A DNA stretch of 64,000 nt from Rebecca billardiae RCC1528 (taxonomy: Eukaryota; Protista; Haptophyta). The notes beneath the pieces were generated by a model. The model ran no database searches, was not told the origin of the DNA, and saw only the letters and a program-made list of their open reading frames with translations. The first letter of the stretch is position 1; the number at the start of each line of letters is the position of its first letter. The stretch covers positions 930,001 to 994,000 of the forward strand of contig OZ251237.1 in the NCBI GenBank assembly GCA_965240325.2, given 5' to 3'. The translations under genes were made by a program, and so were the position numbers. Below are positions 3,869-17,221 of this stretch, piece after piece.

Positions 3869-4933
3869 CCAATGGTCTTTTTTAGCTGCGTGCAGCACCG
3901 TGCGCGCGGCGTGGCTCCTGGGACGCCGCGGCTGAGGGAGTACTCCGGGTCATCCGCGGTGCCTCGTAACTTACACACCGTTCGCAGGCGGCGCTGCCAC
4001 GTCGGTGGCCGGTCTGCGTGAGTCGGGCGAGCCGCAGTATGAGTATCGAACGCCCGCGACGCGCGGTCTCGTGGCACGAATCCGGCCCAGATCTGGCCGA
4101 TCAGTGACTGATCCGGTGATCCCCCGAAGTACGCCTGCCGTTAGCTTGTAAGACTAGCTGATAATGAAAGCAGTAAGCACTCGGTGTGACAGTAGCTAGA
4201 GCAGCGCTGCGAAGGCTTGAACCGTTCCAAGTGCGCGCCGCGGTTGCCCGTCGGTGCTGTCTCATCAGGACTCGGTCGCGCTCACAGTCCGGGACAGTGT
4301 GAGCGTCTGAGCGAGCAGTCCGCTTCCGGAGCCTGAGCAGCACCACCGGCTGCATCAAAGCTACTGCTCGAAGATAGTGTTGAAGCCCGTTGGGCGAATG
4401 TTCTGAACGACATAAATAAGTTCTCCAGGAGATTTTCGATCTCCGTTGCCTGAGGGAGACGATTGGTGCCATGGTCAAATGACGTTGATCAAAGTACCCA
4501 TGTCGTTCGGGGCATAGAATGGCATGCGAATGCGAAGCGCCACGATAGGCGCGTCGGAATTCTCCACTCATCGATGACTGACTGAGCCGGGTAGGCCTCA
4601 GTCAAACCTCGAATCATGCAACAACGCGAACAATTCATGCAATTATGGGACGCGCGCAGATAGGTCACTGCGAAGCGTTCTCAGCAGGAGATCGTTACTC
4701 GTACTGGCTCGGGGTATTCAAAGTAATCGATGATTGGTGCCCGCGGCTCATACCGCATCGGGTTGTAGCTGGGCCCATATGCATGCCGTCAAAAAGTGCG
4801 ATTAGAGAGGTTGACGGAACTATTCAACGGCTCGGGGAGGCGCGAACTCCCCTCCGCCTGCGAAACTTGGCTCGGCGACACGAGCGAAAACCAACCCGAC
4901 AACCCGACGCAAACCAACGCGAGAGCGTTTTTG

Positions 4934-7900
4934 ATGGGCGAGACCAAGGTGACACCCCTGCCGACGGAGGGCGGAGCGGAGGTCGACGAGGCGGCGAAGA
5001 GCGCCGACAGCCAAGACGAGTCCCCACGCGAGGTGGGCCGCAGCCGCATCGCCGCCGCCGCGCACGGCGCGGGCGCGCGCGCGCGCAAGCTCATCGACGT
5101 CGCGCTCACGCGCAACAACAAGGGGGACGACTCGGAGGACGAAGAGGAGGGCGTGGCGAAGAAGGGCCGCGCGCAGGACACAAAGAAAGTGAAGGGCATC
5201 CTCAAGACCGGCAACGACCATCGCCGCAAGGCGGGCGACCGCACGGTCAAGTGGCGGACGGTGCTCGCCGGCGAGGAGGCGACGCTGGACGACGAGCGCG
5301 CGCGTGAGCAGATCTTGACGGACGAGCGCGAGAAGCGCGAGCGGTTCAAGGCGATTGCTCGACTCGCGCGCATCCCCATATTCACGATGGAGGAGCTCAT
5401 GATCCCGCTCCGTCTCGCCTTCCCGCACGAGCTCGCGTACAGCAGCTTCGCGATCGTGATCGACGTGATCGGTGACCTCTTCGAGCTGTGCTGGATCGCC
5501 AAGACGATCATGGAGCAGCCGACGGGCGAGGAGCGGCGCAAGTTGATCGCGGAGGCGCAGGCGAGCGCGACGGGCGACGGCGATGCCGCCGTCGCCGGCC
5601 TCTACCTCGCCAAGCACGCCGTGCGCGACATCGGCACGACCTTTGCGCTGCACATCGCGCGCGCCGTCTACATCCTGACGGGCAACGACTGGATGTGGTC
5701 GCTCGTGCAGATCCTGCGCGCGGTGCGCGTGCGCGAGCTGGTCATGTACGTGCAGGAGATCAACACCGACTTGACCGTCAACGTCAAGTTCCTCGCCGCG
5801 TACAAGTTCTCCATCGTGATCATCTCCGTGCCCCACTGGGTGCGCGCGCATGCGCACGCACGACGAGCGTGCGCGCGCGCGCGCGAGTCTGCGTGCACGC
5901 GCGCGCGCGCCTGCGCCGAGCGAGGGTGCTGCTGCGCCCGGCGCGCGCTCTCTCACGCGCCGCGCGCGCGCCGCGCGCGCGCCGTACTTCCTCCACCACG
6001 CGCTACCGCTCGGCAGGTCGCCTGCTGCTGGTGGGCGCTCGGCGAACGCTGGTCCAACCAGCCGCTCGAGCTGCCCAACTGGCCGGCGCAGATCCCGCTG
6101 CTGACCGAGAACGCAGACCTCGACCCGGGGACCGCCAGCCTGTACCAGCAGTACCTGATGAGCCTGTACATGGCGTGGATGGGCCTCACGTCGATGGGCT
6201 ACGGCACGATCATCCTCACGGTGAAGGCCGAGGTGCTCTTCGCCGCGGTCGTCGCCGCGCTGCAGATGGTCTTCTACGCGTTCGTGCTCGGCACGCTCTT
6301 CCAGTACCTCGTGCGCACCGACCAGAGCACCGTGCACTACAACGAGCTGATGAAGGCGGTGGACGACTACGTCACCGAGCGCAAGCTGCCCAAGGAGCTC
6401 GCACTCCGCATCCGCGGGCACTACCAGTTCCAGCACCGCAAGCTCGCCGCGGGCTCCGACCTGATCAACGGGCAGATGCCGCTCTCGCTGCGCGTCGAGG
6501 TGGCGTCCTCGCAGCACATGCGGCAGATGGAGCAGACGTGGGTCTTCTGGTCGTGCAACCACCAGTTCCTCACGTACGTCACGCTGTACCTGCGCGAGCG
6601 GTACATGATGGTAAGCGCTCTCGTCGGCGTACGCGCCGTGCCGCACCGCGCCTGCCGCGCGGGCGCGCTGGGTTGCGCGCGCGGCGCGCACGCGCACGCG
6701 AGACTCGCGCATGTCGCCTTCTCAGCTGTCGGCGCTGCCGTGCCCTCCATCCCCGCCACCGGCGCCCCACCGCATCCGCCCACCTCCGCCGCCGACGCCG
6801 ATACCGTCGTCCACAGCCAAGCCAGGTGGCCTTCAAGCGCGGCGACGGCGCGGCCGAGCTCCTCTGGTGCGTCGGCGGCACGATGCACATGTGGCGCGGC
6901 GACACGCTCGTCTCCACCGTCCGCTCCGAGCTGGGCCCGGGCCAGGTGGTGGGCGAGGTCGCCTTCTTCATCGGCCTGCCGCACCCGTACACGGCGCTCG
7001 CGTCGTCCAAGGGCGAGGTGACGCTGAGCGTGCTCACCGCCACCACCTTCCTCGAGGTCATCGCCTCGTACCCCGAGCAGACCGACCTCATCCTGCAGAA
7101 CGTGCTGCGCAAGTACGGCCTCGACAAGCAGGGCGCCGACCTCGCGACCGGCGGCTTTGCCGAGCAGATGGACGAGGACGAGCTGCGCGAGTACGAGGCG
7201 CTGCGCACGTTGATCCGCACGGCGATCCTCGACCGGAACGAGGAGCTGTTCTCGCAGATGGCCATCGCGGTGCGCCACGGCGACGTCGAGACCGTGCGCC
7301 AGCTCATCGCCCGCGGCTTCGACATCCAGGCCTTCTCGCACGACAAGCGCACGCCGCTCCACCTCGCGTGCGTCGAGGGCCACAGCACGGTCGTCAAGCT
7401 GCTGTGCGAGCTCGGCGCGAACACGGCGGTGAAGGACCGCTTCGGCGCGTCGCCGTTCGAGAACGCGATGAAGGGGAAGCACTCGGCGGTCGCGGAGGAG
7501 CTCGTGAAGGCGGGCGCGCAGCTCATCCTCGACCTGCCGCACGCGTGGACGCACTCCGCCGCCAAGCAGGGCGACATGCCGATGATGACGATGCTCGTCG
7601 CGCACGGCGTGGCGCTCGACTCGAAGAACTACGACGGGCGCACCGCGCTGCACGTCGCCGCGACGGAGGGCAACCTGCGCGTGACGGAGTACCTCATCTC
7701 GAACATGTGCGACGTGCACGTGCGCGACCGCCACGGCCGCTCCGCGCTCGACGACGCCATCCTGCTCAACCACCACCTCGTCGCGCAGATGCTTGTCAAG
7801 GCGTCGGCGCGCGCCGAGGGCGAGCACATCGCCAACATGGTGCGGCAGGCGGCGACGCGGGGCGACGTCGAGCGGCTGCGCTTCCTCTTCACGGTGGGCG

Positions 7901-10900
7901 CGAAGGTCGACATGCCCGACTACGACGGGCGCACCCCGCTCCACTTCGCCGTCATGTCCGGCTCGATCTCGAGCGTGTACCTGCTGGTGAAGGCGATGGC
8001 GGACGTGAACCGCGAGGATCGGTGGAATCGGCCGCCGCTGATGGACGCGTTCAACGTCGACCTCAAGATCGCGAGCATCCTGATCTCGGCGGGGGCGACG
8101 GTGCCGGAGCGGTACATGGCGGACGAGAAGATCCAGCTCAAGATGCACAAGGCGAAGACCCTCAACCTCTACGAGGTCACGCGCGCGGTGACGAAGCTCG
8201 CGCACCTGCACGATCACCACGCGACCGAGCTCGTCGACAAGTCGCGCGAGGTCGAGATGTCGATCATGGAGCTCGCCAACGACCTGAGCAAGCTGCACCG
8301 GCACCAGCGCATCCTCTTCCGCTCGGTGGGCAAGTGGTCCGACTTCTGGATCAACGAGTACGGCGAGGAGCTCGACTCGGACACCGACTCCGACCCGGAC
8401 TCGGACGACGGCAAGGGCAAGGACGACGACTCGGACAGCGACGACGGCCGCGGCGCGCAGGCCGTGGGCGGCGCCGTGGACGGGCAGGGCGAGTCGACGG
8501 AGCAGCAGGACTCGCGCGCGGCGTCGAAGCAGTTCATCAAGCTCGTGCTGCAGCTGCCCTCCGCCGAGGCCGGCCTCATCGACATCCGCGACCGCTTCGC
8601 CGCCGTGCTCTCGTCCGAGCGGTTCTCGCAGCTCGAGGAGAAGGAGCGGCGCAAGGCGGAGGACAAGGAGCTGCTGCTCATGCTGCAGCACGTGTTCGAG
8701 CTCGACGCGGACAAGTCGAGCGAGGTGCTGCGCGACGTGTACGACGAGCTCAAGTCGATCCTCGGCGACTCGGCGCCGATGTCGCCCGCCGACATCGCCA
8801 AGATGGGCACGACCAAGCCGGGCCGCGCCGCGGCGGGCGCCGAGAGCACGGCCGCGGACGAGATGGAGGCGATGGCGCGGCAGCACGCGGCCAGCGGCAG
8901 CAACAACGGCTCGCTCTACGGCCGGCGGAACTCGAACACCGACGCGAAGGCGGCGGCGGCGGCGGTTCAGCGCCACGACTCGAAGGGCGGCAAGGACGGC
9001 TCCTTCTCCAAGGGCAACGGCTCGTTCAAGGAGACGCTGCGTCGCGGCTCGAAGACCGGCGCCGTGTTGATCGAGATGTCGCGACAGCTCAACGACCCCA
9101 AGGCGAGCGCGGAGCGCTCCGGTGAGGAGCGTGACGGGCCGCTGTTCCTCTCGGAGCTCGGCCACGTGGTGCTCTTCTGCTCGCGCCGCTTCATCGACCT
9201 GCTCGCCGAGCGCTACGGCATGCGGCGGCGGAAGAAGGCGCTGGCCAAGAGCGCCGCGGCCGCGATCGGCGCGGCCGAGCCTGGCTCGCCGCCCGCGCGC
9301 GCTTCCAAGGACAATGATCTCGCCGCCGAGGACGACGACACCACCGGCTCGCCCAAGCGCAAGAGCCGGTTCAGCGGCATGGCCGCGCGGCTGCGCACCA
9401 GCTTCAACGCCGACGAGCGCGGCAGCGGCGCGCTGCCCACGGCCGACGCTGCGGCGGGCGGCGACGGCTCGGGCTCGCCGCGCGAGTCCGACCCGGGCGC
9501 GGACGGCGTGGAGGCCGGCATCGTCGCCATCGAGGAGGCGTGCTTCGTGATCACGCGGCTCTTCCGCGTGTTCGACGCGTCGCGCACCGGGCAGATCCGC
9601 ATGCGCGACGTGCGCAAGCTGCAGGGCGAGCTCGGCGAGTTCGGCTCGGAGGAGATCAAGTCGCTGCTCACCTACCTGATGGCCGCGTCGCGCAACCTGA
9701 CCGCGCCGCCGGAGGAGGTCGCGGCCGTCGCCGAGGACGGCCAGCTCGTTGCCGACGCCGAGCCGATGGGCACGGTGGCGGGCCGTCGGCGCAGCACGTC
9801 GCGCGTGCTCGAGAACGGCGGCGCGAGCGGCACCAGCTCGCGCCGCACCACGCTCCAAGTCGGGCAGAAGGCCGAGGGCAACGCGGTCGACCTGGAGCTC
9901 GAAAAGCTCTTTGCCGCCGTCGCCGCGGACGCGGACGACGGCTCCGCCGACCGCAGGTCCTCCGACGACCGCAACGCCGCGGAGGCGGCGGAGAACACGG
10001 CCGCGGCCGACGCCGCCGACGCGGCCGCGGCCGAGGCTACCGGCGCCGACGCCGCCGGCGCTGCCAAGGACCCCAACAGCGTCAACGTCGCGCCGGCGCC
10101 GGAGGTGGGCGCGGAGGAGTCGGCGCCCGCGGAGGCGGCGGGCAGCGCGGCCGAGGCGGCGAGCGTGGCGGCGGACGAGAGCACGGCGGTCGTCGCGCAC
10201 ACCGCCGGCGAGGCCGAGGACGCGCCCCCCGCCGAGGCGCCGTCGAGCACGGTGGCGCCGAGCGGCCGCGCGATCCACGCGGGCAACGACCAGGTGCTGC
10301 AGCTGCGCTCCAAGGGGCGGAGCAACCGGCCGGCGCAGTCCATGTCCGAGTCTCAGTTCTTCATCGGCGTGTCCTCTTGGATTTTGCTCGCGGTCTCGGA
10401 GGACGCGGCGGCTGGGGCGGGCGCCGGCAGCAACGGCGTCTTCATCCCGAAGCTGCGCAAGGGCGACGTGCTGGCGGCGGGCAAGGTGATGTCCAAGGCG
10501 GCGCAGGCCAAGGCGAAGGCGGCGAAGGCGGAGGCGGCGCGCATCGCCGCCGCGGAGGCGTCGATTGTCGCCGAGCTCAACGCAGCGCTGGGCACCGCGA
10601 CTGCGTGCATGCTGCTCGCGGACAACCTCACGCTGCGCATCGAGACCGGCCGCATCGAGCCGGCGGACGAGGTCGACACGAACGTGCTGCTCGGCGCGGT
10701 GCAGCACGCGCTCGCGATCCCGATGGAGACGACGGCCGAGCACATCCGAGGCTGGGTCGAGCGCGAGCTCGAGCTGACGATCCCGCAGCGCGGGAGGCCC
10801 GTCGCGGACGCGCACGCCGGCGAGGAAGGCGCGGCCGTCGCGGAGGGCTCCGTCGCCAAGGGCCACGACGGCGAGGACGAGGACGACCCCAACGCCGCGT

Positions 10901-13900
10901 TCGCGCACTCGCTGCTGCTCAGCGCGGCCGAGCTCGAGGCCGAGGAGCTCGAGCAGCGGAAGGTCACCTGGGAGAAGCTCGTGACCAAGCTGCGCGACCG
11001 CGTGGCGGCGCTGCGCGCGGCTGGCGGTGTCGACCCGGTCACCGGCGCGGCGAACGGCGGGAAGAAGAAGGGCATCGTCGCGCTGCTCGAGAGGTTCGAC
11101 ATCCAGGTGGGCTCGCGCGAGATTGTCTCCGCAGAGGCGGGCGTCGAGAACGGCGCGAGCACGACGACGGTGTGGCCGTGGTACATCGTCTCGGTCCACT
11201 CTCGGATGAACAAGCTGAGCGTGTGGCTCTTCTACATCACCGCGCTGTGGGACGTGCTCACCGTGCCGATGCAGCTGTGCTTCTTCGAGGAGGTGGTGCT
11301 GATGCGCTGGGTGCCGTACGTCAACCTCGTGTGCGACGCGCTGTACATGCTGCGCATCATCCTGCGCTTCAACACGACGTTCATCAACGACAAGTCGGTC
11401 GAGGTGTTTGCGCCGTCCGAGGTGCGCGCGCACTACCTCTCCAACGACTTTGGCCTCGACGCGTTCGCGTGCTGGCCGCACGACCAGGTGCTGTGGGTGC
11501 TCGGCATCGACCCGATGATCCGCTTCGGCGTGCGCCACCTGCGCATGATCAACGCGCGCTACCTGCTCGGCGCGTTCAAGGTGTGGCGGTCGAACCTCTC
11601 CGAGCGCCAGATGGGCCGGATGCTGCTCAAGAACGCGCTGCCGCTCATCCTGATCATCCACTACTGCGCGGGCGTGTGGAACGTGATCGGCTTCTCGTCG
11701 ATGGCGCTCGGCCAGTGGGACAACACGTGGGCCACGTACTACCTGCGCCAGCGCGTGATGGTGGGCGGCGAGGATGGGCTGCTCACGCAGATGGCGCCCG
11801 AGGAGCGGCTCATGGAGCACTACATCACCGCGGTCTTCTTCGTGCTCTCGCTCGTCTCTGCGCTCGGCGTCGTGCAGCTGCCCGCCACGTACGTCGAGTT
11901 CTCGATGTTCGTGTGCTTCTGCGTGATCAACATGACCATCTGTACGTGCCGCGTGCGCAGCGAGCGGACCACCTCGCGCGCGCGCTCACGCGCTTCCTCT
12001 GCGCGCACGCCCCGGCGCCCGCGCGCCACCTGTGCGCCGCAGACGCGTACTGCGTCGGCGGCATCTCGGGCATCGTGATGAAGATGGACGACGAGATCGT
12101 CGGCAAGCGCGCGCACCTCGAGCTCGTGCACGCGTACGTGCGCCACGTGAACGTGCCGGCCGATCTGAAGGAGCGGATGACCAAGTTCTTCGTCGACAAG
12201 ATGCAGCACGCCTCCTTCTCCAACATCGACTCGGAGCAGATCTACACGGGGCTGCCCGTGCCGCTGCAGATGGAGATCTCGTCGAACACCAACCGCGCGC
12301 TCATGGCCAACACCACGCTGCTCAAGGGCTGCGACGAGGGCTTCATCGACCGGCTCTCGGGCGTGCTCACCGAGCGCGAGATCGAGGCGGAGACGGTGAT
12401 CTACCGCACGGGCGACCAGTGCAAGGAGCTGATCCTGCTCGCCTCGGGCTCGGTCGAGATCTGCGACGGCGACGATGCCGAGCAGAGCGACGACAAGAAC
12501 CAGACGGCCGGTCCGGGCGAGTTCCTCGGCGAGGTCGCGTTCATCTTCGGGATCAGACATTACAAGACGGCCAAGGTGAGCCGCAACGACAAGGCGACCA
12601 CGTTCGTGCTGAACCAGGAGCTGTACCGCGAGCTGCTCAAGTCCTTCCCGGCCCAGGAGGACACGCTCATGGACAACGCCGTCCGCCAGTATGAGGGCCT
12701 GAGTACGCGCGGCGCGCGCGCGCGCGCGCGCGCATGCGCTCGCGGGCCACGCGGCCCTCAACTCTCGGCGCGCGCGCATGGCTGACGCGATGGCTGACTG
12801 CTCGCGCCCGCCACGCACCCCTCTCCCGGCGCTGCGCGCACGTGCGGATGTGCGCAGCCATGGGCTCGGCGCGCTCTGGCCGCTCCAAGGCCTCCTCCGG
12901 CAACCGCAGCAGCCACAGCTCGGGCTCGGGAGGCGGCAGCTCGCAGCACAGCAGCAGCCTTGATGCCAGCTCGCAGGATGGCCGCTCGGAGACTGGCAGC
13001 TCGGGTGGCGCCTCCGACATCATCTCGCTGCAGCAGGTGCGCCGGCCGCCAGCGCGATCGCGCCCCATCCCGCGCCTCCCGCGTGCACGGCGCTGAGCCG
13101 CGCTCCGCCCGGCGCTCCGCACGCGCGTGGCGCGCGCGCGCGGCGCCACTGCACAGACGCTCGCCAACGCGAAGGCGAAGCGCGATGAGATGATGCACGC
13201 GAAGATCTGCACGGCGTGCGTCAAGGGCGAGTTCGAGAAGGTGCGCCGGCTGATCTCGGCACGCTCGATGGATGTCGACCACGCCGACTCGCACGGCCGC
13301 CGCCCGCTGCAGCTCGCCGCATGCGGCGGGCACAAGAAGCTGATCGAGCTGCTGCTCGCCGCGCGCGCAGACGTGAACGCGGAGGACAAGATCGGGCACA
13401 CAGCGCTCGACGACGCGCTGCAGTCGGACAACTTCGAGACCGCGGCGCTGCTCGCGAGCCACGGCGGGCTGCACGGCACGCGCAACGTGTCCGAGGAGAT
13501 GTGCGCGGCCGGCGCCGTGCCGGGCGGCACGGCGGTGCTGCAGCGGTTCTGCTCGTTCGGCGGCAACGTGAATGCGGGCACGCTCGAGCTGCGCTCGGCG
13601 ACGCACGTGGCGGCGGCGGAGGGGCGGACGGAGAACCTGCTGCTGCTCATCGACAACAACTCCGACGTGAACAACCGCGACCTCCGCGGCGCGACCGCGC
13701 TGCAGGACGCGCTACTCGGCCACCAGGACGAGGCGTGCGCGCTGCTCGTCAAGCACGGCGCCAAGCTCGGCGAGTTCGACATCGCGCGGTACGTGAACGA
13801 GTCGGCGACGCTGCCGGACGTGGAGAACCTCAAGCGGATCATCACGTTCGCCTGCTCCGTCAACCAGCAGGACGAGCTCGGCCGCGCGCCCCTCCACCTC

Positions 13901-14762
13901 GCCGCGTCGTCACGCAACGTGAACGGCCTCAACTTCCTGGTCGGGCTGCCGGACATCGAGATTAATCTGGAGGATGCGTTCGGGAATACGGCGTACGACG
14001 ACGCGCTGCGCGACGGGACGGACGAGGGGAAGGTGGTGCTGGCGATCCTGCTCGCGCGCGGCGGCAAGCCCGGCTCGCACGTCCATCGCCCGACCAAGTT
14101 CCGCACGGACGTCGAGGCGGCGCGCATCAAGGTGATGCGCGCCGGCATCGACCAGCGCGAGCAGATGCTGCGCGACGTGGTCGCGATGCGCGCGTGGGTG
14201 AAGGAGGAGAAGGAGGCGAATAAGTTGCTGAAGGAGCAGGTCGACAAGGCGGTGCAGCTGCAGCGCAACCGCGGCGCCGTGCTCGCCGACGAGATGCCCG
14301 AGCTGTGGGACCATCTCTACAACTATGCCGGTGCGCGCGCGTGGCCCGCGCCACGCCCTGCCAACTGCCGCGCGCCCGCGCGCGCTACGCGCGACGCGCG
14401 TGCTGCTGACTTTGCGCGCACGCGCGCGCCCACCCGTCCGCCCGGGCGCAGAGGGCTACTTCGACTGGCGCGACGACGCGACGGGCACGCTCGCGCCCCT
14501 CATCGACCGCTGGTCCGACGACGCCAAGGAGTTCGCTCTCTTCGCCACGAAGAAACTGAAGTCGAAGGTGCGCCCGCGCGCGGGCGGGGCGGCAGGGGGC
14601 TCGCACGCGCGCACCGCTCACACGCGCACGCGCGCCCGCGCCGCGCACCCCCCGCCCCCGCAGTACGACGACATCATCGCGCTCGGCGACACGGACGCCA
14701 AGCCGGTCGAGAGACTGTATGAGGTCACCTTCCGCAAGCCGGTCAAGGCGGACGCGAGCTGA
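4934..14762 (+). CDS. Tandem two-repeat voltage-gated/cyclic-nucleotide-binding-domain cation (K+) channel with ankyrin repeats (~2950 aa)
   Basis: Introns at 5840-6016, 6611-6816, 11942-12042, 12703-12857, 13037-13156, 14331-14451 and 14568-14663 give a spliced length of 8853 nt (2951 codons). Repeat I: S1-S6 with pore SLYMAWMGLTSMGYGTI, C-linker, CNBD (GEVAFFIGLPHPYTA) and ankyrins (RTPLHLAC, GRTALHVAA, GRTPLHFAV). Repeat II: S1-S6 with pore AVFFVLSLVSALGVVQLP, CNBD (GEFLGEVAFIFGIRHYKTA) and ankyrins (GRRPLQLAA, GHTALDDA, GRAPLHLAA). Confidence 0.85.
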
Positions 14763-15143
14763 TTGGCTGAGGGCGGACACTCGGCGGGCGCGAGGGGCTA
14801 GGCGCGCACACAGAACCCTTTGTTTGCTTGCTTTGGAGCTTGAAGACCAAGTCGTGATCATCCGGTGCTGTGCTCGATGATGCACAACGCGTGGCGGCGC
14901 GTGCGAGGACTCACACCACACGAGTCAAGGACGTGTGCGCGCTACTGTGCGATTGCTGCGAATGCTGCTGCTGCTACTGCGAAGAATGGAGAGTGGTGAT
15001 GATGGTTATTTTATAATGTTATCTTCTTGGAGACGTCGCAGGCTCCGAAGCGCTCGAACCCCTGCTGAGACTGCTACAGGCATCATGATCATATCCTACC
15101 ATCATCTGCTGGGGCATTGTCATGCGCCAAACCGTTTGCGCGA

Positions 15144-15145
<2 letters not shown>

Positions 15146-15232
<87 letters not shown>
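15146..15232. repeat. (AT)n microsatellite, ~43 units
   Basis: Uninterrupted ATAT run read directly, between two convergent genes. Confidence 0.97.
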
Positions 15233-15233
<1 letters not shown>

Positions 15234-15964
15234 CGCAGTAGCTATATAGTGTAACAGTATATCGTCAGCATAATATATTGTATGCTGATAGATCCGTAGT
15301 CGGCCCGGACTCGGCCAGATCCGCGAGTCTGACGCGTGCTGCGCGCGTCAGGCCGGCGTCATCGGCGATCGGTCAGAACTGCTGAGCAGATCGATGAACA
15401 ACTACGACGTCGATGCCAGTAGTAGTACGACGACGGCTGCTCGCTTGCAGCACGTGGAGCAGCTGTCATCGGAGTGAGAGAGAGTCGTCAATCGTCATCG
15501 CTGATCGCAGTTCGCATCGCGGCACCGTGTAAATACGTAGTAGTACTACTACGACTACTACTATGACGAGTTCGTACTTACTGCTATACGACTACGGTAT
15601 ACTGCCGAGTGCTAGTACTCACTAGAGTAGTAGTACTACTCGTAGCATATATATCATATGTGCGGTCGCAGGCCGGATATATCTTGGATCATCATTTGCG
15701 CGCCGGCCGGCGGCACGGCCGCGGAGCGCCCGCGCGGGCCAATATCTCAATCTGAACGCCGTCGTAAGCTACCGACTACCGCGAGTCGGGCATATCCGAG
15801 AAGTCGGCTCAGTGCGGACCGTGCATGCAGCAGTCCGGCCAGCAGTCGTCCGGTAGGCGGTACTCTCCGGTGATCACTCGACGACGATGATTATTATTTA
15901 CTAATATAATTAATTGGGCGGCTACGTACGAAGAACTCGACGAACGGAAGAACCAACGGTAAGC

Positions 15965-17221
15965 TCAGTTTTCTTCACCAGCTTGCAACCAGCTGCCCAT
16001 ACGGAGCGTCTCGACCGGGACGCGCTCAGCAAGTCGTGGCCACACCGAGCGCAAAACATCCTCAGTCGCTTGTGAGGCGCTACTGAGGCCAGAGACGAAG
16101 CGGGCACGTTGGTCGTTTGTGTTGCTGATGATGGTGCACTTACCTTTGACTTTGTTCTTGAAGTCCAGCGCTCGATGCTGTTTCCCAACGCCGACGGGCA
16201 GGGTCGCGTCACGGCCGTGCCCTTGCCTGTACTCCTTCAGCTTGCACTCGGCATACGAGCGCGAGTAGTAGTGGTAGAGCTGCAGGTCTCTGTACTCATA
16301 GAACTTGCTTTCCGTGAGCTGAGTCACGTCCACGCCGAGCGGCCACTGGCCACCTGCCTCCTGGAATCTCTCAAACAAGCCTGTCTTGCGCCACCCAAAG
16401 GCGCACTTCATGTTCGCTCTGAGCGAGGTGAGGGGTGCCGGATAATGTCTATCCGTCAACGAGCCGTTGCTCACGTCAGCGGGAGGGTATTGCTCGATCA
16501 CCGTGTGCTGCCACGCCCCGACTCCCCGGCCGACGCGTATGATGGGCTTGCCGAAGCACGTCGTGTATGTCGGGCCCGTGCTGTCAGCCTCTGTCCGCAC
16601 GTACGCTCGCGGCTCGAAGAAGAAAGGCCCAAGCGTCTCGGTCGGCGGCACCGGCGTCTGTGGAACGCCTGAGGCTGCGGTCACGTCGTAAAAGGTGAGC
16701 CTGGGCATGATCAAGCCAAGGATGTGATCAGGCACTCTGCGGAGTACCGAGGGCAGACTCCACGCCACCCAGTCGCTGGTATTGGCACGCCTGTGACGCG
16801 GGCGCCCAAAATGCATGTACTCGTCGCCGTCGGGAAACGCGAGCCAATCCGCGTCTCGAGCGGCCTCAGTCGTGCGGATGCAGTGGCCGCGGGCTTCGTC
16901 CTGGTTCCCGACACGCGTGGTGGTCCAGGGAAACACGCGTATGTACTTGGCCCACGACCGCAGCGCTTCGAGCCAGGCAGCGCTCTCCGGTGGGTCCGCC
17001 GTGCGGTCGTCGATGTAAACCCACGCGCTCTCGACGCCGATGAGCCGATGGTAGGCGAGGTGGTGGAAGAGGGTATGCTTTTCGTATTCGTACAGCGCGA
17101 TGATGCAGATACGCACCGACGTATCTTCCTTCCCCCACGCGCTTGCTTCCCCATCGCGCTGGCCACCTCCGATCGCGCTGGCCACCACCAGCGCGATCGC
17201 CGCAGTGCCAACGGCGCCCAT
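15965..17221 (-). CDS. Glycosyltransferase, GT92/DUF23 (GT-A fold)-like, secreted or type II membrane
   Basis: N-terminal hydrophobic segment MGAVGTAAIALVVAS. Motifs include ICIIALYEYE...LAYHRLIGVESAWVYIDD, a DxD-containing DWLAFPDGDEY, KPI, and C-terminal LYHYYSRS. Appears intronless. The start is chosen at ATG 17221, not the upstream ORF start. Confidence 0.7.
   Translation of the reverse strand: MGAVGTAAIALVVASAIGGGQRDGEASAWGKEDTSVRICIIALYEYEKHTLFHHLAYHRLIGVESAWVYIDDRTADPPESAAWLEALRSWAKYIRVFPWTTTRVGNQDEARGHCIRTTEAARDADWLAFPDGDEYMHFGRPRHRRANTSDWVAWSLPSVLRRVPDHILGLIMPRLTFYDVTAASGVPQTPVPPTETLGPFFFEPRAYVRTEADSTGPTYTTCFGKPIIRVGRGVGAWQHTVIEQYPPADVSNGSLTDRHYPAPLTSLRANMKCAFGWRKTGLFERFQEAGGQWPLGVDVTQLTESKFYEYRDLQLYHYYSRSYAECKLKEYRQGHGRDATLPVGVGKQHRALDFKNKVKGKCTIISNTNDQRARFVSGLSSASQATEDVLRSVWPRLAERVPVETLRMGSWLQAGEEN

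What the first reader, a model, noticed from the sequence alone, without database searches (positions are those of the whole stretch)
4934..14762. Covalent two-repeat Shaker/CNBD-ankyrin channel with an asymmetric selectivity filter (GYG vs ALGVV)
Seen: one continuous spliced frame encodes [6TM-CNBD-ANK]-long linker-[6TM-CNBD-ANK]-helical tail. Exon 6817-11941 runs without a stop from the repeat I CNBD to repeat II S6, so the fusion is not a gene-model artefact. Pore I is TSMGYGT (~6188-6208, K+ signature); pore II is VSALGVVQ (~11854-11877, signature lost). Known: plant AKT/SKOR channels are single-repeat tetramers, and sperm tetraKCNG/CNGK channels have four repeats but no ankyrins. Inference: a dimer would form a pseudo-tetramer with a fixed 2:2 asymmetric filter, possibly giving altered selectivity or a built-in regulatory (KC1-like) half. 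I do not recognise this architecture as characterised.
Basis: partly seen in the sequence, partly recalled or inferred. Interest (0 to 1): 0.75.

Follow-up and report, generated by a model that had tools for sequence, protein, structure and literature searches.

The report
Two-repeat ankyrin CNBD channel, mismatched filters
One algal gene really does encode two different plant-Shaker-like channel units in a single chain of about 2,950 residues, only the first with a potassium-type filter; it belongs to a large, old, functionally untested family, so it is a new variant of a known kind.

Summary
Window 4934-14762 (+) is one 8-exon gene of about 2,950 codons. All seven introns are GT-AG. Its layout is [divergent S1-S4-like, GYG pore, C-linker, CNBHD, ANK], then a linker of about 950 aa, then [6TM, deviant pore, C-linker, CNBD-like, ANK], then a helical tail.

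Exon 6817-11941 is open for 1,708 codons and keeps GC3 at 0.95-1.0 throughout.

Filter II is not a sequencing error. At least 18 paralogs in the same genome, and homologues from other organisms, carry the same LG..Q(L/V)P.N..E motif, which is never GYG. The genome holds at least 42 repeat-II-type loci.

Full-length two-repeat homologues exist as MMETSP transcripts and in Diacronema, Rhodelphis and Cymbomonas. In a tree, repeat I and repeat II modules form separate clades (100/99 support each). Both are distinct from compact tandem and four-repeat CNBD channels.

Two-repeat tandem CNBD channels were described from sequences in 2020 (dinoflagellates, oomycetes; GYG-like in both repeats; no ankyrin mentioned). 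This is therefore a new variant, not a new kind. The 2:2 dimer pore and altered selectivity remain inference.

This scan reached the same reading for two paralogs on other pieces of this genome.

The parts
4934..5839 (+). Exon 1: N-terminal cytosolic region, a long helix running into a weakly hydrophobic S1-like stretch, S2-, S3- and S4-like helices of repeat I, and the start of S5
   Evidence: Translation and GT donor at 5840. Family alignment A1 has invariant D/D/E in the S2-like helix and R..R in the S4-like helix. Hydropathy. AF2 model with pLDDT 77. Best Foldseek hits are GORK/SKOR/SthK VSD+S5, but only at E=0.07 or weaker. GC3 0.94.
6017..6610 (+). Exon 2: end of S5, turret, pore helix, filter I, S6 and C-linker of repeat I
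   Evidence: AG at 6015-6016 and GT at 6611. Pfam Ion_trans_2 at 21.5 bits. The homologous part of P0016 matches GORK at 1e-21 and SKOR at 1e-18.
6188..6208 (+). Selectivity filter I, TSMGYGT (K+ signature)
   Evidence: T[SA][ML]GYG is conserved in the own-genome paralogs where the exon was caught.
6817..7150 (+). Start of exon 3: CNBD-homology domain I; the phosphate-binding Arg position is Tyr (PYT), as in GORK (QPFT)
   Evidence: Pfam cNMP_binding at 23.9 bits, below the 27.5 cut-off. Alignment to GORK. Rows of A3.
7243..8319 (+). Ankyrin repeat domain I
   Evidence: Pfam Ank_2 1.6e-38. tblastn to P0001 ANK, 55% identity.
8320..11175 (+). Inter-repeat linker of about 950 aa, inside exon 3. 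Conserved blocks at 8320-8367, 8515-8613, 9133-9216, 9568-9618 plus 9646-9699 (EF-hand-like helix-loop-helix), 10336-10404 and 10582-10632, separated by variable acidic/Ala/Ser-rich stretches
   Evidence: No stop. GC3 at least 0.95. Lowest GC 0.67, so no intergenic-like dip. Blocks are collinear in 9 paralogs and in P0001, P0016, P0020, P0025. The EF-hand evidence is weak only: Pfam E 0.18-0.26 and atlas scores 0.84-0.86.
11176..11941 (+). End of exon 3: S1-S5, pore helix, filter II and most of S6 of repeat II
   Evidence: Pfam Ion_trans at 28.3 bits, profile positions 5-217 of 241. Alignment A2. GT donor at 11942.
11854..11877 (+). Filter II, VSALGVVQ, followed by LPAT..E: no Tyr, no second Gly, and one residue shorter than the plant-Shaker GYGDLHPxN
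   Evidence: The paralog L016 has the same SALGVVQLPA stretch, and 18 paralogs have LG..Q(L/V)P.N. 66 repeat-II-type modules in public data show TxG + 3-4 aa + PxN..E.
12043..12702 (+). Exon 4: end of S6 (restores ..NMTI-YAYCVGG-ISG..), C-linker and CNBD II; the canonical PBC Arg position is Lys here
   Evidence: AG at 12041-12042, and the join is collinear with paralogs. Pfam cNMP_binding at 38 bits.
12858..13036 (+). Exon 5: Ser/Gly-rich spacer (..RSGRSKASS..)
   Evidence: Splice sites. Collinear with P0001, P0016 and P0017.
13157..14330 (+). Exon 6: ankyrin repeat domain II and a helical (coiled-coil-like) segment
   Evidence: Pfam Ank_2 3.5e-26. 30% identical and collinear with ANK I, E=6e-27. 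Splice sites.
14452..14567 (+). Exon 7: conserved tail (E-GYFDW...)
   Evidence: Splice sites and collinearity with P0001, P0016 and P0017.
14664..14762 (+). Exon 8: conserved C-terminus (..DAKPVERLYEVTFRKPVK..) and stop codon
   Evidence: The same C-terminal motif is present in P0001, P0016 and P0017. Low-GC intergenic DNA begins at about 14800.

Best explanation
Window 4934-14762 (+) is a single gene of 8 exons and about 2,950 codons. It encodes a two-repeat member of the CNBD-channel superfamily.

Repeat I is plant-Shaker-like. It has a divergent, weakly hydrophobic voltage-sensor-like bundle, a pore with the K+ signature TSMGYG, a C-linker, a CNBD-homology domain lacking the phosphate-binding Arg, and ankyrin repeats. 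A conserved linker of about 950 aa, with an EF-hand-like motif, leads to repeat II.

Repeat II has an ordinary S1-S6 with 3-4 Arg in S4, a deviant filter (S-A-L-G-V-V-Q-L-P-A), a C-linker, a CNBD-like domain, ankyrin repeats and a helical tail.

Shown here:
- It is one gene with both modules.
- The asymmetry is conserved.
- The two repeats arose by an old duplication of the pore-to-CNBD module.
- The family is separate from the compact tandem and four-repeat CNBD channels.

Inferred:
- Two chains assemble so that the two repeat-I and the two repeat-II pore domains alternate around one pore, as in two-pore channels and K2P channels.
- Filter II is a residue shorter and lacks the Tyr and the second Gly, so the outer K+ sites cannot be four-fold. 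The pore should be a weakly selective cation pathway rather than a strict K+ channel.
- Gating would come from voltage (mainly repeat II) and from the cytosolic CNBHD/ANK/linker assembly, not from cyclic nucleotides.
For: Single gene:
- The exon is open for 1,708 codons, with GC3 0.95-1.0 along it and no low-GC island between the repeats.
- All seven introns are GT-AG, and every join is collinear with homologues.
- The linker blocks are conserved.
- 18 of 20 fetched paralog loci have the same order of parts.
- Full-length two-repeat homologues exist as an MMETSP transcript (P0020, 2,647 aa), as an intronless 8,395-nt JGI contig with short UTR-like ends (P0016) and as the Diacronema model P0001.

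Domains.

Conserved asymmetry.

Old duplication and separate family: in the careful IQ-TREE, repeat I modules (16 rows, 100/99), repeat II modules (24 rows, 100/99) and the other tandem modules (26 rows, 99/99) are each one side of a branch. ANK I and ANK II are collinear at 30% identity. Repeats I and II are 27% identical from pore to CNBD, and the alignment places SMGY opposite ALGV.

No canonical cNMP site: PYT in CNBHD I as in GORK; the canonical Arg position in CNBD II varies.

The one-pore model rests on analogy with TPC, K2P and CNGK. The 2020 survey reviews how tandem repeats build one pore (PMC7576140).
Against: - No RNA run could be listed for this genome, so the window's own transcript is not shown.
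- One MMETSP ORF (P0017) starts inside the linker. It could be a shorter isoform or a truncated contig.
- The linker is long enough to let the two repeats sit in different pores.
- The complex prediction of the pore domains gave no answer (score 0.02).
- Repeat I's S1 is poorly hydrophobic. Its structural match to voltage sensors is below significance, so its topology is not settled.
- Selectivity cannot be read from sequence. HCN has CIGYG yet is non-selective (PMC7576140).
Confidence: 0.6

Rival explanations
1. Twin-pore assembly. Four chains come together; the four repeat-I modules form a classical K+-selective pore and the four repeat-II modules form a second, differently selective pore, tethered by the long linkers.
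For: The linker is about 950 aa, far longer than inter-repeat linkers of TPC or Cav/Nav (my own knowledge), so nothing forces the two pore domains together. Each repeat has its own complete pore-C-linker-CNBD-ANK set. Plant Shaker relatives are homotetramers (GORK/SKOR entries). The MMETSP ORF P0017 holds repeat II without repeat I.
Against: In every characterised channel with several pore modules in one chain, the modules share one pore (my own knowledge; reviewed in PMC7576140). Repeats I and II stay distinct and paired across distant lineages, which fits complementary roles. Repeat I's degenerate sensor suggests that it relies on repeat II.
Confidence: 0.2
2. Repeat II, or the whole protein, is not a conducting channel. 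Filter II is collapsed, and the protein acts as a membrane sensor or scaffold, or as a silent regulatory half that only modulates repeat I.
For: Filter II lacks the Tyr and the second Gly and is one residue short. Outside the pavlovophyte-type subfamily both filters are highly variable, as expected if ion coordination is relaxed.
Against: Filter II still has conserved positions (L, G, P, E nearly invariant in A2). The pore helix and S6 are conserved too. At least 42 loci keep open frames. CNG channels conduct with TIGE-type filters (PMC7576140).
Confidence: 0.12
3. Gene-model artefact. Two adjacent channel genes are read through only because stops are rare in GC-rich DNA, and they are transcribed separately.
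For: Long open frames occur by chance here: there is an antisense ORF of 1,799 aa. No RNA evidence exists for this locus. The ORF of P0017 starts in the linker.
Against: GC3 is 0.95-1.0 in one frame through the linker, and there is no low-GC spacer. The linker blocks are conserved in other species. Full-length two-repeat transcripts exist for homologues. The same layout occurs in 18 paralogs. The antisense ORF has no family.
Confidence: 0.04

Closest known systems
Plant Shaker-type K+ channels with ankyrin repeats (GORK, SKOR, AKT1)
   Same: Repeat I from the pore to the ankyrin domain aligns in one stretch with SKOR and GORK (E about 1e-49 with ANK; 1e-21 and 1e-18 without). It has a GYG filter, a CNBD-homology domain without the phosphate-binding Arg (PYT versus GORK's QPFT), and ANK directly after the CNBHD. 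Filter II keeps the Shaker-like outer motif P-x-N..E.
   Different: One chain carries two such modules, whereas plant Shakers are single-repeat tetramers. Repeat I's S1-S4 is degenerate. Repeat II's best solved relatives are KCNH2/EAG/HCN rather than plant channels. Filter II is not a K+ signature. A KHA tail was not looked for. No tree with plant sequences could be made.
[quoted passage not shown] 2020, PMC7576140)
   Same: Two 6TM-CNBD modules sit in one chain. The repeats are 30% identical or less, and first and second repeats form separate clades. They are known from sequence only.
   Different: That paper reports TVGYG-like filters in both repeats, does not mention ankyrin, and found no tandem channel in haptophytes. 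In my tree the compact tandem proteins, including the Phytophthora protein P0019, fall outside the repeat I + repeat II clade (99/99). The inter-repeat linker here is about 950 aa and conserved.
Four-repeat CNGK / tetraKCNG channels
   Same: Several CNBD-channel modules in one chain form, by inference, one pore. The repeats have diverged from each other.
   Different: Four repeats, no ankyrin domains, K+-selective GYG-type filters (my own knowledge). Four-module proteins found here (for example P0028, P0032) group away from this family.
Two-pore channels (TPC1)
   Same: Two non-identical 6TM repeats per chain, a dimer as the working unit, two different filters lining one pore, and an EF-hand region in the inter-repeat linker of plant TPC1 (my own knowledge). 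This is the model for how the protein here may work.
   Different: TPCs have no CNBD, C-linker or ankyrin domains and belong to a different branch of the voltage-gated superfamily. The EF-hand-like motif here is only weakly supported.
Heteromeric CNG channels (CNGA/CNGB)
   Same: The pore is built from unlike subunits with non-GYG filters (TIGE-type) and conducts cations non-selectively. They show that a CNBD-family pore works without the K+ signature.
   Different: The subunits are separate genes, gating is by cyclic nucleotide with an intact binding site, and there is no ankyrin.

Membership tests
CNBD-channel superfamily (6TM + C-linker + CNBD) | Pore module followed by C-linker and a CNBD fold, in each repeat | tested here: met
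   Pfam cNMP_binding in E3 and E4, Ion_trans in E3, Ion_trans_2 in E2. PDB phmmer for repeat I: GORK 1e-21. For repeat II: KCNH2 1e-28, HCN4 2e-18.
CNBD-channel superfamily (6TM + C-linker + CNBD) | Four-helix voltage-sensor domain S1-S4 before the pore | tested here: inconclusive
   Repeat II meets it: Ion_trans profile positions 5-217, and hydrophobic S1-S5. Repeat I does not clearly meet it. It has no Pfam hit and its S1-like stretch carries E/E/R with low hydropathy. The AF2 model shows a helical bundle, but its best matches to GORK/SKOR/SthK are only at E=0.07 or weaker.
K+-selective channels | Signature T-x-G-Y/F/L-G in every pore-lining loop | tested here: not met
   Filter I (TSMGYG) meets it. 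Filter II (SALGVV) does not: no Tyr/Phe, no second Gly, one residue shorter.
Plant Shaker family (AKT/KAT/SKOR/GORK) | Single 6TM-CNBHD(-ANK)-KHA subunit that tetramerises; membership of the plant Shaker clade | tested here: not met
   The architecture is two-repeat. Clade membership could not be tested, because no named plant sequences were retrievable. The resemblance of repeat I is strong. KHA was not examined.
Two-repeat tandem CNBD channels (Pozdnyakov 2020) | Two 6TM-CNBD modules in one polypeptide, with the repeats diverged | tested here: met
   Definition taken from PMC7576140.
Two-repeat tandem CNBD channels (Pozdnyakov 2020) | Common descent with the oomycete/dinoflagellate tandem clades | tested here: not met
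   Modules of the Phytophthora protein P0019 and of the compact tandem proteins P0067, P0079, P0087 and P0089 lie on the other side of a 99/99 branch from both repeat clades of this family. The organisms of the compact proteins, apart from P0019, are not known.
Cyclic-nucleotide-gated channels | Phosphate-binding cassette with the conserved Arg before (T/S)A | tested here: not met
   CNBHD I has Tyr (PYTA), as plant Shaker CNBHDs do. CNBD II has Lys in the window gene, and the position varies (K, N, S, R, L, Y) across the family. Binding itself is not testable with these tools.
EF-hand Ca2+ sensors (for the linker motif) | 12-residue loop D-x-[DNS]-x-[DNS]-G-x-[ILV]-x-x-x-[ED] within helix-loop-helix | tested here: inconclusive
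   The window has D-A-S-R-T-G-Q-I-R-M-R-D at 9574-9609. Pfam EF-hand models give only E 0.18-0.26, and atlas EF-hand clusters score 0.84-0.86, below the trust level. Positions 3 and 5 are often Ala/Arg in homologues.

The most novel reading that the evidence does not exclude
This may be a hard-wired C2 version of the plant outward-rectifier type. A dimer of two-repeat chains would fix a 2:2 pore in which a GYG loop alternates with a one-residue-shorter LG..QLP loop. That would give a non-K+-selective (possibly Ca2+-permeable) cation channel, controlled through a conserved EF-hand-like linker and two unlike ankyrin/CNBHD rings. The family has expanded to more than 40 copies as a sensory channel repertoire of pavlovophyte flagellates, and it is old enough to be shared with Rhodelphis and prasinophytes.
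Probability: 0.3. Interest if true: 0.75.

Novelty: new variant of a known kind. Interest (0 to 1): 0.6.

Why it matters
Tandem repeats are how four-fold channels became asymmetric (K2P, TPC, Cav/Nav). This family is an independent, natural case within the plant-Shaker/CNBD lineage. Its two halves have been kept different for a very long time: one has a K+ filter and a degenerate sensor, the other a proper sensor and a shortened non-K+ filter.

It offers a direct experimental handle on two questions. The first is how many GYG loops a pore needs for K+ selectivity. The second is what the C4-to-C2 symmetry reduction seen in SKOR and GORK structures is for.

The size of the family (at least 42 loci in a 72-Mb genome), and its presence in haptophytes, Rhodelphis and a prasinophyte, suggest an important but unstudied signalling function in marine flagellates.

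Tried and rejected
- RNA evidence for the locus: no sequencing run could be listed.
- dN/dS of the linker against the closest paralog L016: uninformative. Even the CNBD gives dN about equal to dS, because synonymous sites are pinned at GC3 of about 0.97. GC3 periodicity was used instead.
- AF2 of the whole repeat I module: poor (pLDDT 62, pTM 0.42). Its Foldseek hits to GORK/SthK/SKOR have TM of only about 0.24.
- Alignment A4 (trimmed fragments) misaligned and was discarded.
- Complex prediction of the two pore domains of P0016, two copies each: no answer (score 0.02). This is evidence neither for nor against.
- Word-based search for single-repeat relatives of repeat I: only a fragment and an animal KCNH3. 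No plant Shaker sequences were available for a tree, and the tree is unrooted.
- Pfam on the linker: nothing significant.
- The protein atlas on the linker: weak EF-hand leads only.
- Exons were searched one by one by reference, and full-length homologues (P0016, P0001) stood in where a contiguous module was needed.
- Rejected: a sequencing error in filter II, because paralog L016 carries the same SALGVVQLPA filter.
- Rejected: the antisense ORF 6421-11820 as a gene.
Full report
**What is there**

The window is about 70% GC and eukaryotic. The region holds one gene on the + strand, bounded by low-GC intergenic DNA at 4100-4800 and 14800-16300. No such dip occurs inside the gene; the lowest GC in the linker is 0.67.

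From translations, peptide mapping and splice-site inspection the model has eight exons:
- E1: 4934-5839
- E2: 6017-6610
- E3: 6817-11941
- E4: 12043-12702
- E5: 12858-13036
- E6: 13157-14330
- E7: 14452-14567
- E8: 14664-14762

All seven introns are GT-AG, and every join is in frame and collinear with homologues. The coding length sums to 8,853 nt, about 2,950 codons.

An open frame alone means little here, because the antisense strand is open for 1,799 aa and matches no family. But GC3 is 0.95-1.0 in the sense frame in every 300-nt step of the exon, linker included, while introns show no periodicity.

**Domains**

Pfam, run exon by exon, gives:
- E2: Ion_trans_2.
- E3: cNMP_binding, five ankyrin families and Ion_trans.
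- E4: cNMP_binding.
- E6: ankyrin families.

Filter I (TSMGYGT) is at 6188-6208 and filter II (VSALGVVQ) at 11854-11877. In the full-length homologue P0001 the two repeats align at 27% identity from the pore helix to the CNBD, with SMGY opposite ALGV. The two ankyrin domains are collinear at 30% identity.

Against solved structures, repeat I from pore to CNBD is closest to GORK (1e-21) and SKOR (1e-18). With the ankyrin part included, it aligns in one stretch to SKOR and GORK at about 1e-49. Repeat II is closest to KCNH2 (1e-28), then EAG, HCN and GORK.

**Caveat on repeat I**

Exon 1 gets no Pfam hit. The family alignment shows an S2-like helix with invariant acidic residues, an S3-like helix, and an S4-like helix with two invariant Arg (a third Arg in many members). 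The S1-like stretch (..LARLP.LT.EEL.IPLRLAF..) is charged and weakly hydrophobic.

An AF2 model of this part (pLDDT 77) is a helical bundle. Its best Foldseek hits are the sensor-plus-S5 parts of GORK, SKOR, SthK and HCN1, but only at E=0.07 or weaker. '6TM' is therefore established for repeat II and only plausible for repeat I.

**The CNBDs**

CNBHD I has Tyr where cyclic-nucleotide binders have the phosphate-binding Arg. This is the same local motif as in GORK. In CNBD II that position is Lys in the window gene and varies across the family. Cyclic-nucleotide gating is therefore doubtful.

**Not an artefact, and not a one-off**

The closest named protein is Diacronema lutheri KFE25_007711 (P0001, 2,650 aa). 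It has the same order of parts, filter I TSMGYAT and filter II SALGVAQLPA. From this and other best hits, the window's organism is probably a pavlovophyte-like haptophyte. That is an inference and was not verified.

The window's own genome (72 Mb, 41 contigs) has at least 42 repeat-II-type loci. Most have a repeat-I-type hit 5-7 kb upstream on the same strand. Of 20 loci fetched, 18 show the full order: N/S1-S5 I, pore I, CNBD I, ANK I, about 3 kb of linker, TM II, pore II, CNBD II.

- Filter I is T[SA][ML]GYG in these loci.
- Filter II is [ST]-x-L-G-x-x-Q-[LV]-P-[AT]-N..E and never GYG.
- Three paralogs keep a second Gly (GSG, GAG, GLG).
- The paralog L016 has the window's exact SALGVVQLPA filter.

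This rules out a sequencing error and shows that the asymmetry is maintained.

The linker is an uninterrupted frame in 9 of 10 paralogs checked. It carries seven blocks conserved with P0001, P0016, P0020 and P0025. One block is EF-hand-like (D-A-S-R-T-G-Q-I-R-M-R-D), supported only weakly by Pfam (E about 0.2) and by the atlas (0.84-0.86).

**Transcript evidence**

No RNA run could be listed for this genome, so the window's own mRNA is not shown. For homologues the evidence is:
- P0020 (2,647 aa) is an MMETSP transcript with both repeats and both ankyrin blocks.
- P0168 (3,020 aa) is another MMETSP transcript.
- P0016 (2,704 aa, both repeats) lies on an intronless 8,395-nt JGI contig with an 82-nt leader and a 198-nt trailer. 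This looks like assembled cDNA, which is an inference.
- The MMETSP ORF P0017 (1,773 aa) begins inside the linker and runs to the C-terminus. It may be a truncated contig or a shorter isoform.

**Wider family**

A profile of repeat II found 1,059 representatives at E of 1e-30 or better. Among the best 150 there are three groups:
- Long-linker two-repeat proteins.
- Compact two-module proteins of about 1,300 aa.
- Four-module proteins.

Named long-linker members come from Diacronema, Rhodelphis marinus (three proteins) and Cymbomonas tetramitiformis. All have two cNMP domains and two ankyrin blocks.

I built a careful IQ-TREE (LG+C20+F+G4, 66 modules, pore helix to CNBD). In it, repeat I modules (16 rows), repeat II modules (24 rows) and all other tandem modules (26 rows, including Phytophthora P0019) are each one side of a branch, with support 100/99, 100/99 and 99/99 (the quick tree agrees). 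The tree is unrooted.

So the pore-to-CNBD module was duplicated once, before these lineages diverged or before any transfer between them. The family is also distinct from the compact tandem channels.

Across 66 repeat-II-type modules the filter reads TxG, then 3-4 residues, then P-x-N..E. A minority read G(A/T)GD at full Shaker length. The window's type therefore looks like a Shaker-like GYGDLHPxN that lost one residue, the Tyr and the second Gly.

Outside the pavlovophyte-type subfamily, filter I also departs from GYG, for example GNLG in Rhodelphis and GYDG in Cymbomonas.

**Literature**

Pozdnyakov et al. 2020 (PMC7576140) first reported two-repeat tandem CNBD channels. The main points:
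- They were found in dinoflagellates and oomycetes.
- Both repeats have TVGYG-like filters.
- Ankyrin is not mentioned.
- The only haptophyte channels described are single-repeat ones from Chrysochromulina.
- The paper states that clade-wide filter deviations are rare, with CNG the exception.
- No electrophysiology was done.

Further searches found no paper on this ankyrin-bearing family.

Two earlier follow-ups of this scan, on paralogs elsewhere in this genome, reached the same reading. I re-derived it independently here.

**How it most likely works**

Shown: one chain carries two unlike channel modules, and the asymmetry is conserved.

Inferred, by analogy with TPC, K2P and CNGK: two chains form one pore with alternating I and II pore domains. 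The outer ion sites cannot then be four-fold, so K+ selectivity should be weakened. Repeat II supplies the better voltage sensor. The CNBHD/ANK rings and the conserved linker supply cytosolic control.

The main rival is a twin-pore tetramer (I4 plus II4), which the very long linker permits. The single complex prediction gave no answer.

**Verdict**

This is a new variant of a known kind. It is interesting mainly as an untested, ancient, much-expanded natural experiment in pore asymmetry.

Noticed in passing
L030 (G000:C8:1554937-1564936, - strand) and L031 (G000:C8:1487912-1497911); also G000:C3:3524708: These loci hold giant open frames (13,615, 12,933 and 8,009 aa) that end in a repeat-II-type CNBD channel module with filter TSLGLTQLPAT. 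The 2,694 aa just upstream in L030 hold PAS_9 (the family that includes LOV domains) in 8 stretches (E=3e-119) and RGS in 4 stretches (E=1e-19). No repeat-I module lies within 10 kb. This is a candidate RGS/PAS-array::channel fusion.
   Followed up: partly
G000, 42 loci listed (for example C5:3701661, C15:1544602, C7:3856452): The two-repeat channel family is expanded to at least 42 loci in a 72-Mb genome. The window gene is not the copy closest to Diacronema P0001. Its nearest paralog is L016 (C15), which has the same filter II.
   Followed up: partly
L022 (G000:C8:2652584-2654050) and L024 (G000:C7:1746475-1756474): L022 has one in-frame TGA inside repeat II. L024 has 6 stops in the linker frame. 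These could be pseudogenes, extra introns or assembly errors.
   Followed up: no
window 6421-11820, - strand: A 1,799-aa antisense open frame lies over exon 3 and has no Pfam family. It is a by-product of the sense strand's GC3 of about 0.97, which makes stop codons rare.
   Followed up: yes
P0001 (Diacronema lutheri KFE25_007711): The deposited model lacks ankyrin domain II and part of the S5-turret of repeat I, although the flanking sequence is collinear with P0016 and the window gene. These are probably gene-model gaps.
   Followed up: no
P0019 (Phytophthora lilii, 2,459 aa); P0028, P0032, P0034 and others: Many public proteins carry four CNBD-channel modules in one chain. The Phytophthora protein shows 4 cNMP and 3-4 Ion_trans stretches rather than two. 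Their organisms, apart from P0019, are unknown.
   Followed up: no
P0017 (MMETSP transcript, 1,773 aa): An ORF flagged 'complete' starts inside the inter-repeat linker and contains only repeat II. It is either a 5'-truncated contig or a shorter isoform from an internal start.
   Followed up: no
L001 (ENA metagenome contig, P0007) and L035 (P0018): On these metagenomic contigs an ankyrin block, a long linker, a 6TM module with a non-GYG pore, a CNBD and more ankyrin lie in one intronless frame. On L035 a separate ankyrin ORF follows, perhaps split off by an intron.
   Followed up: no
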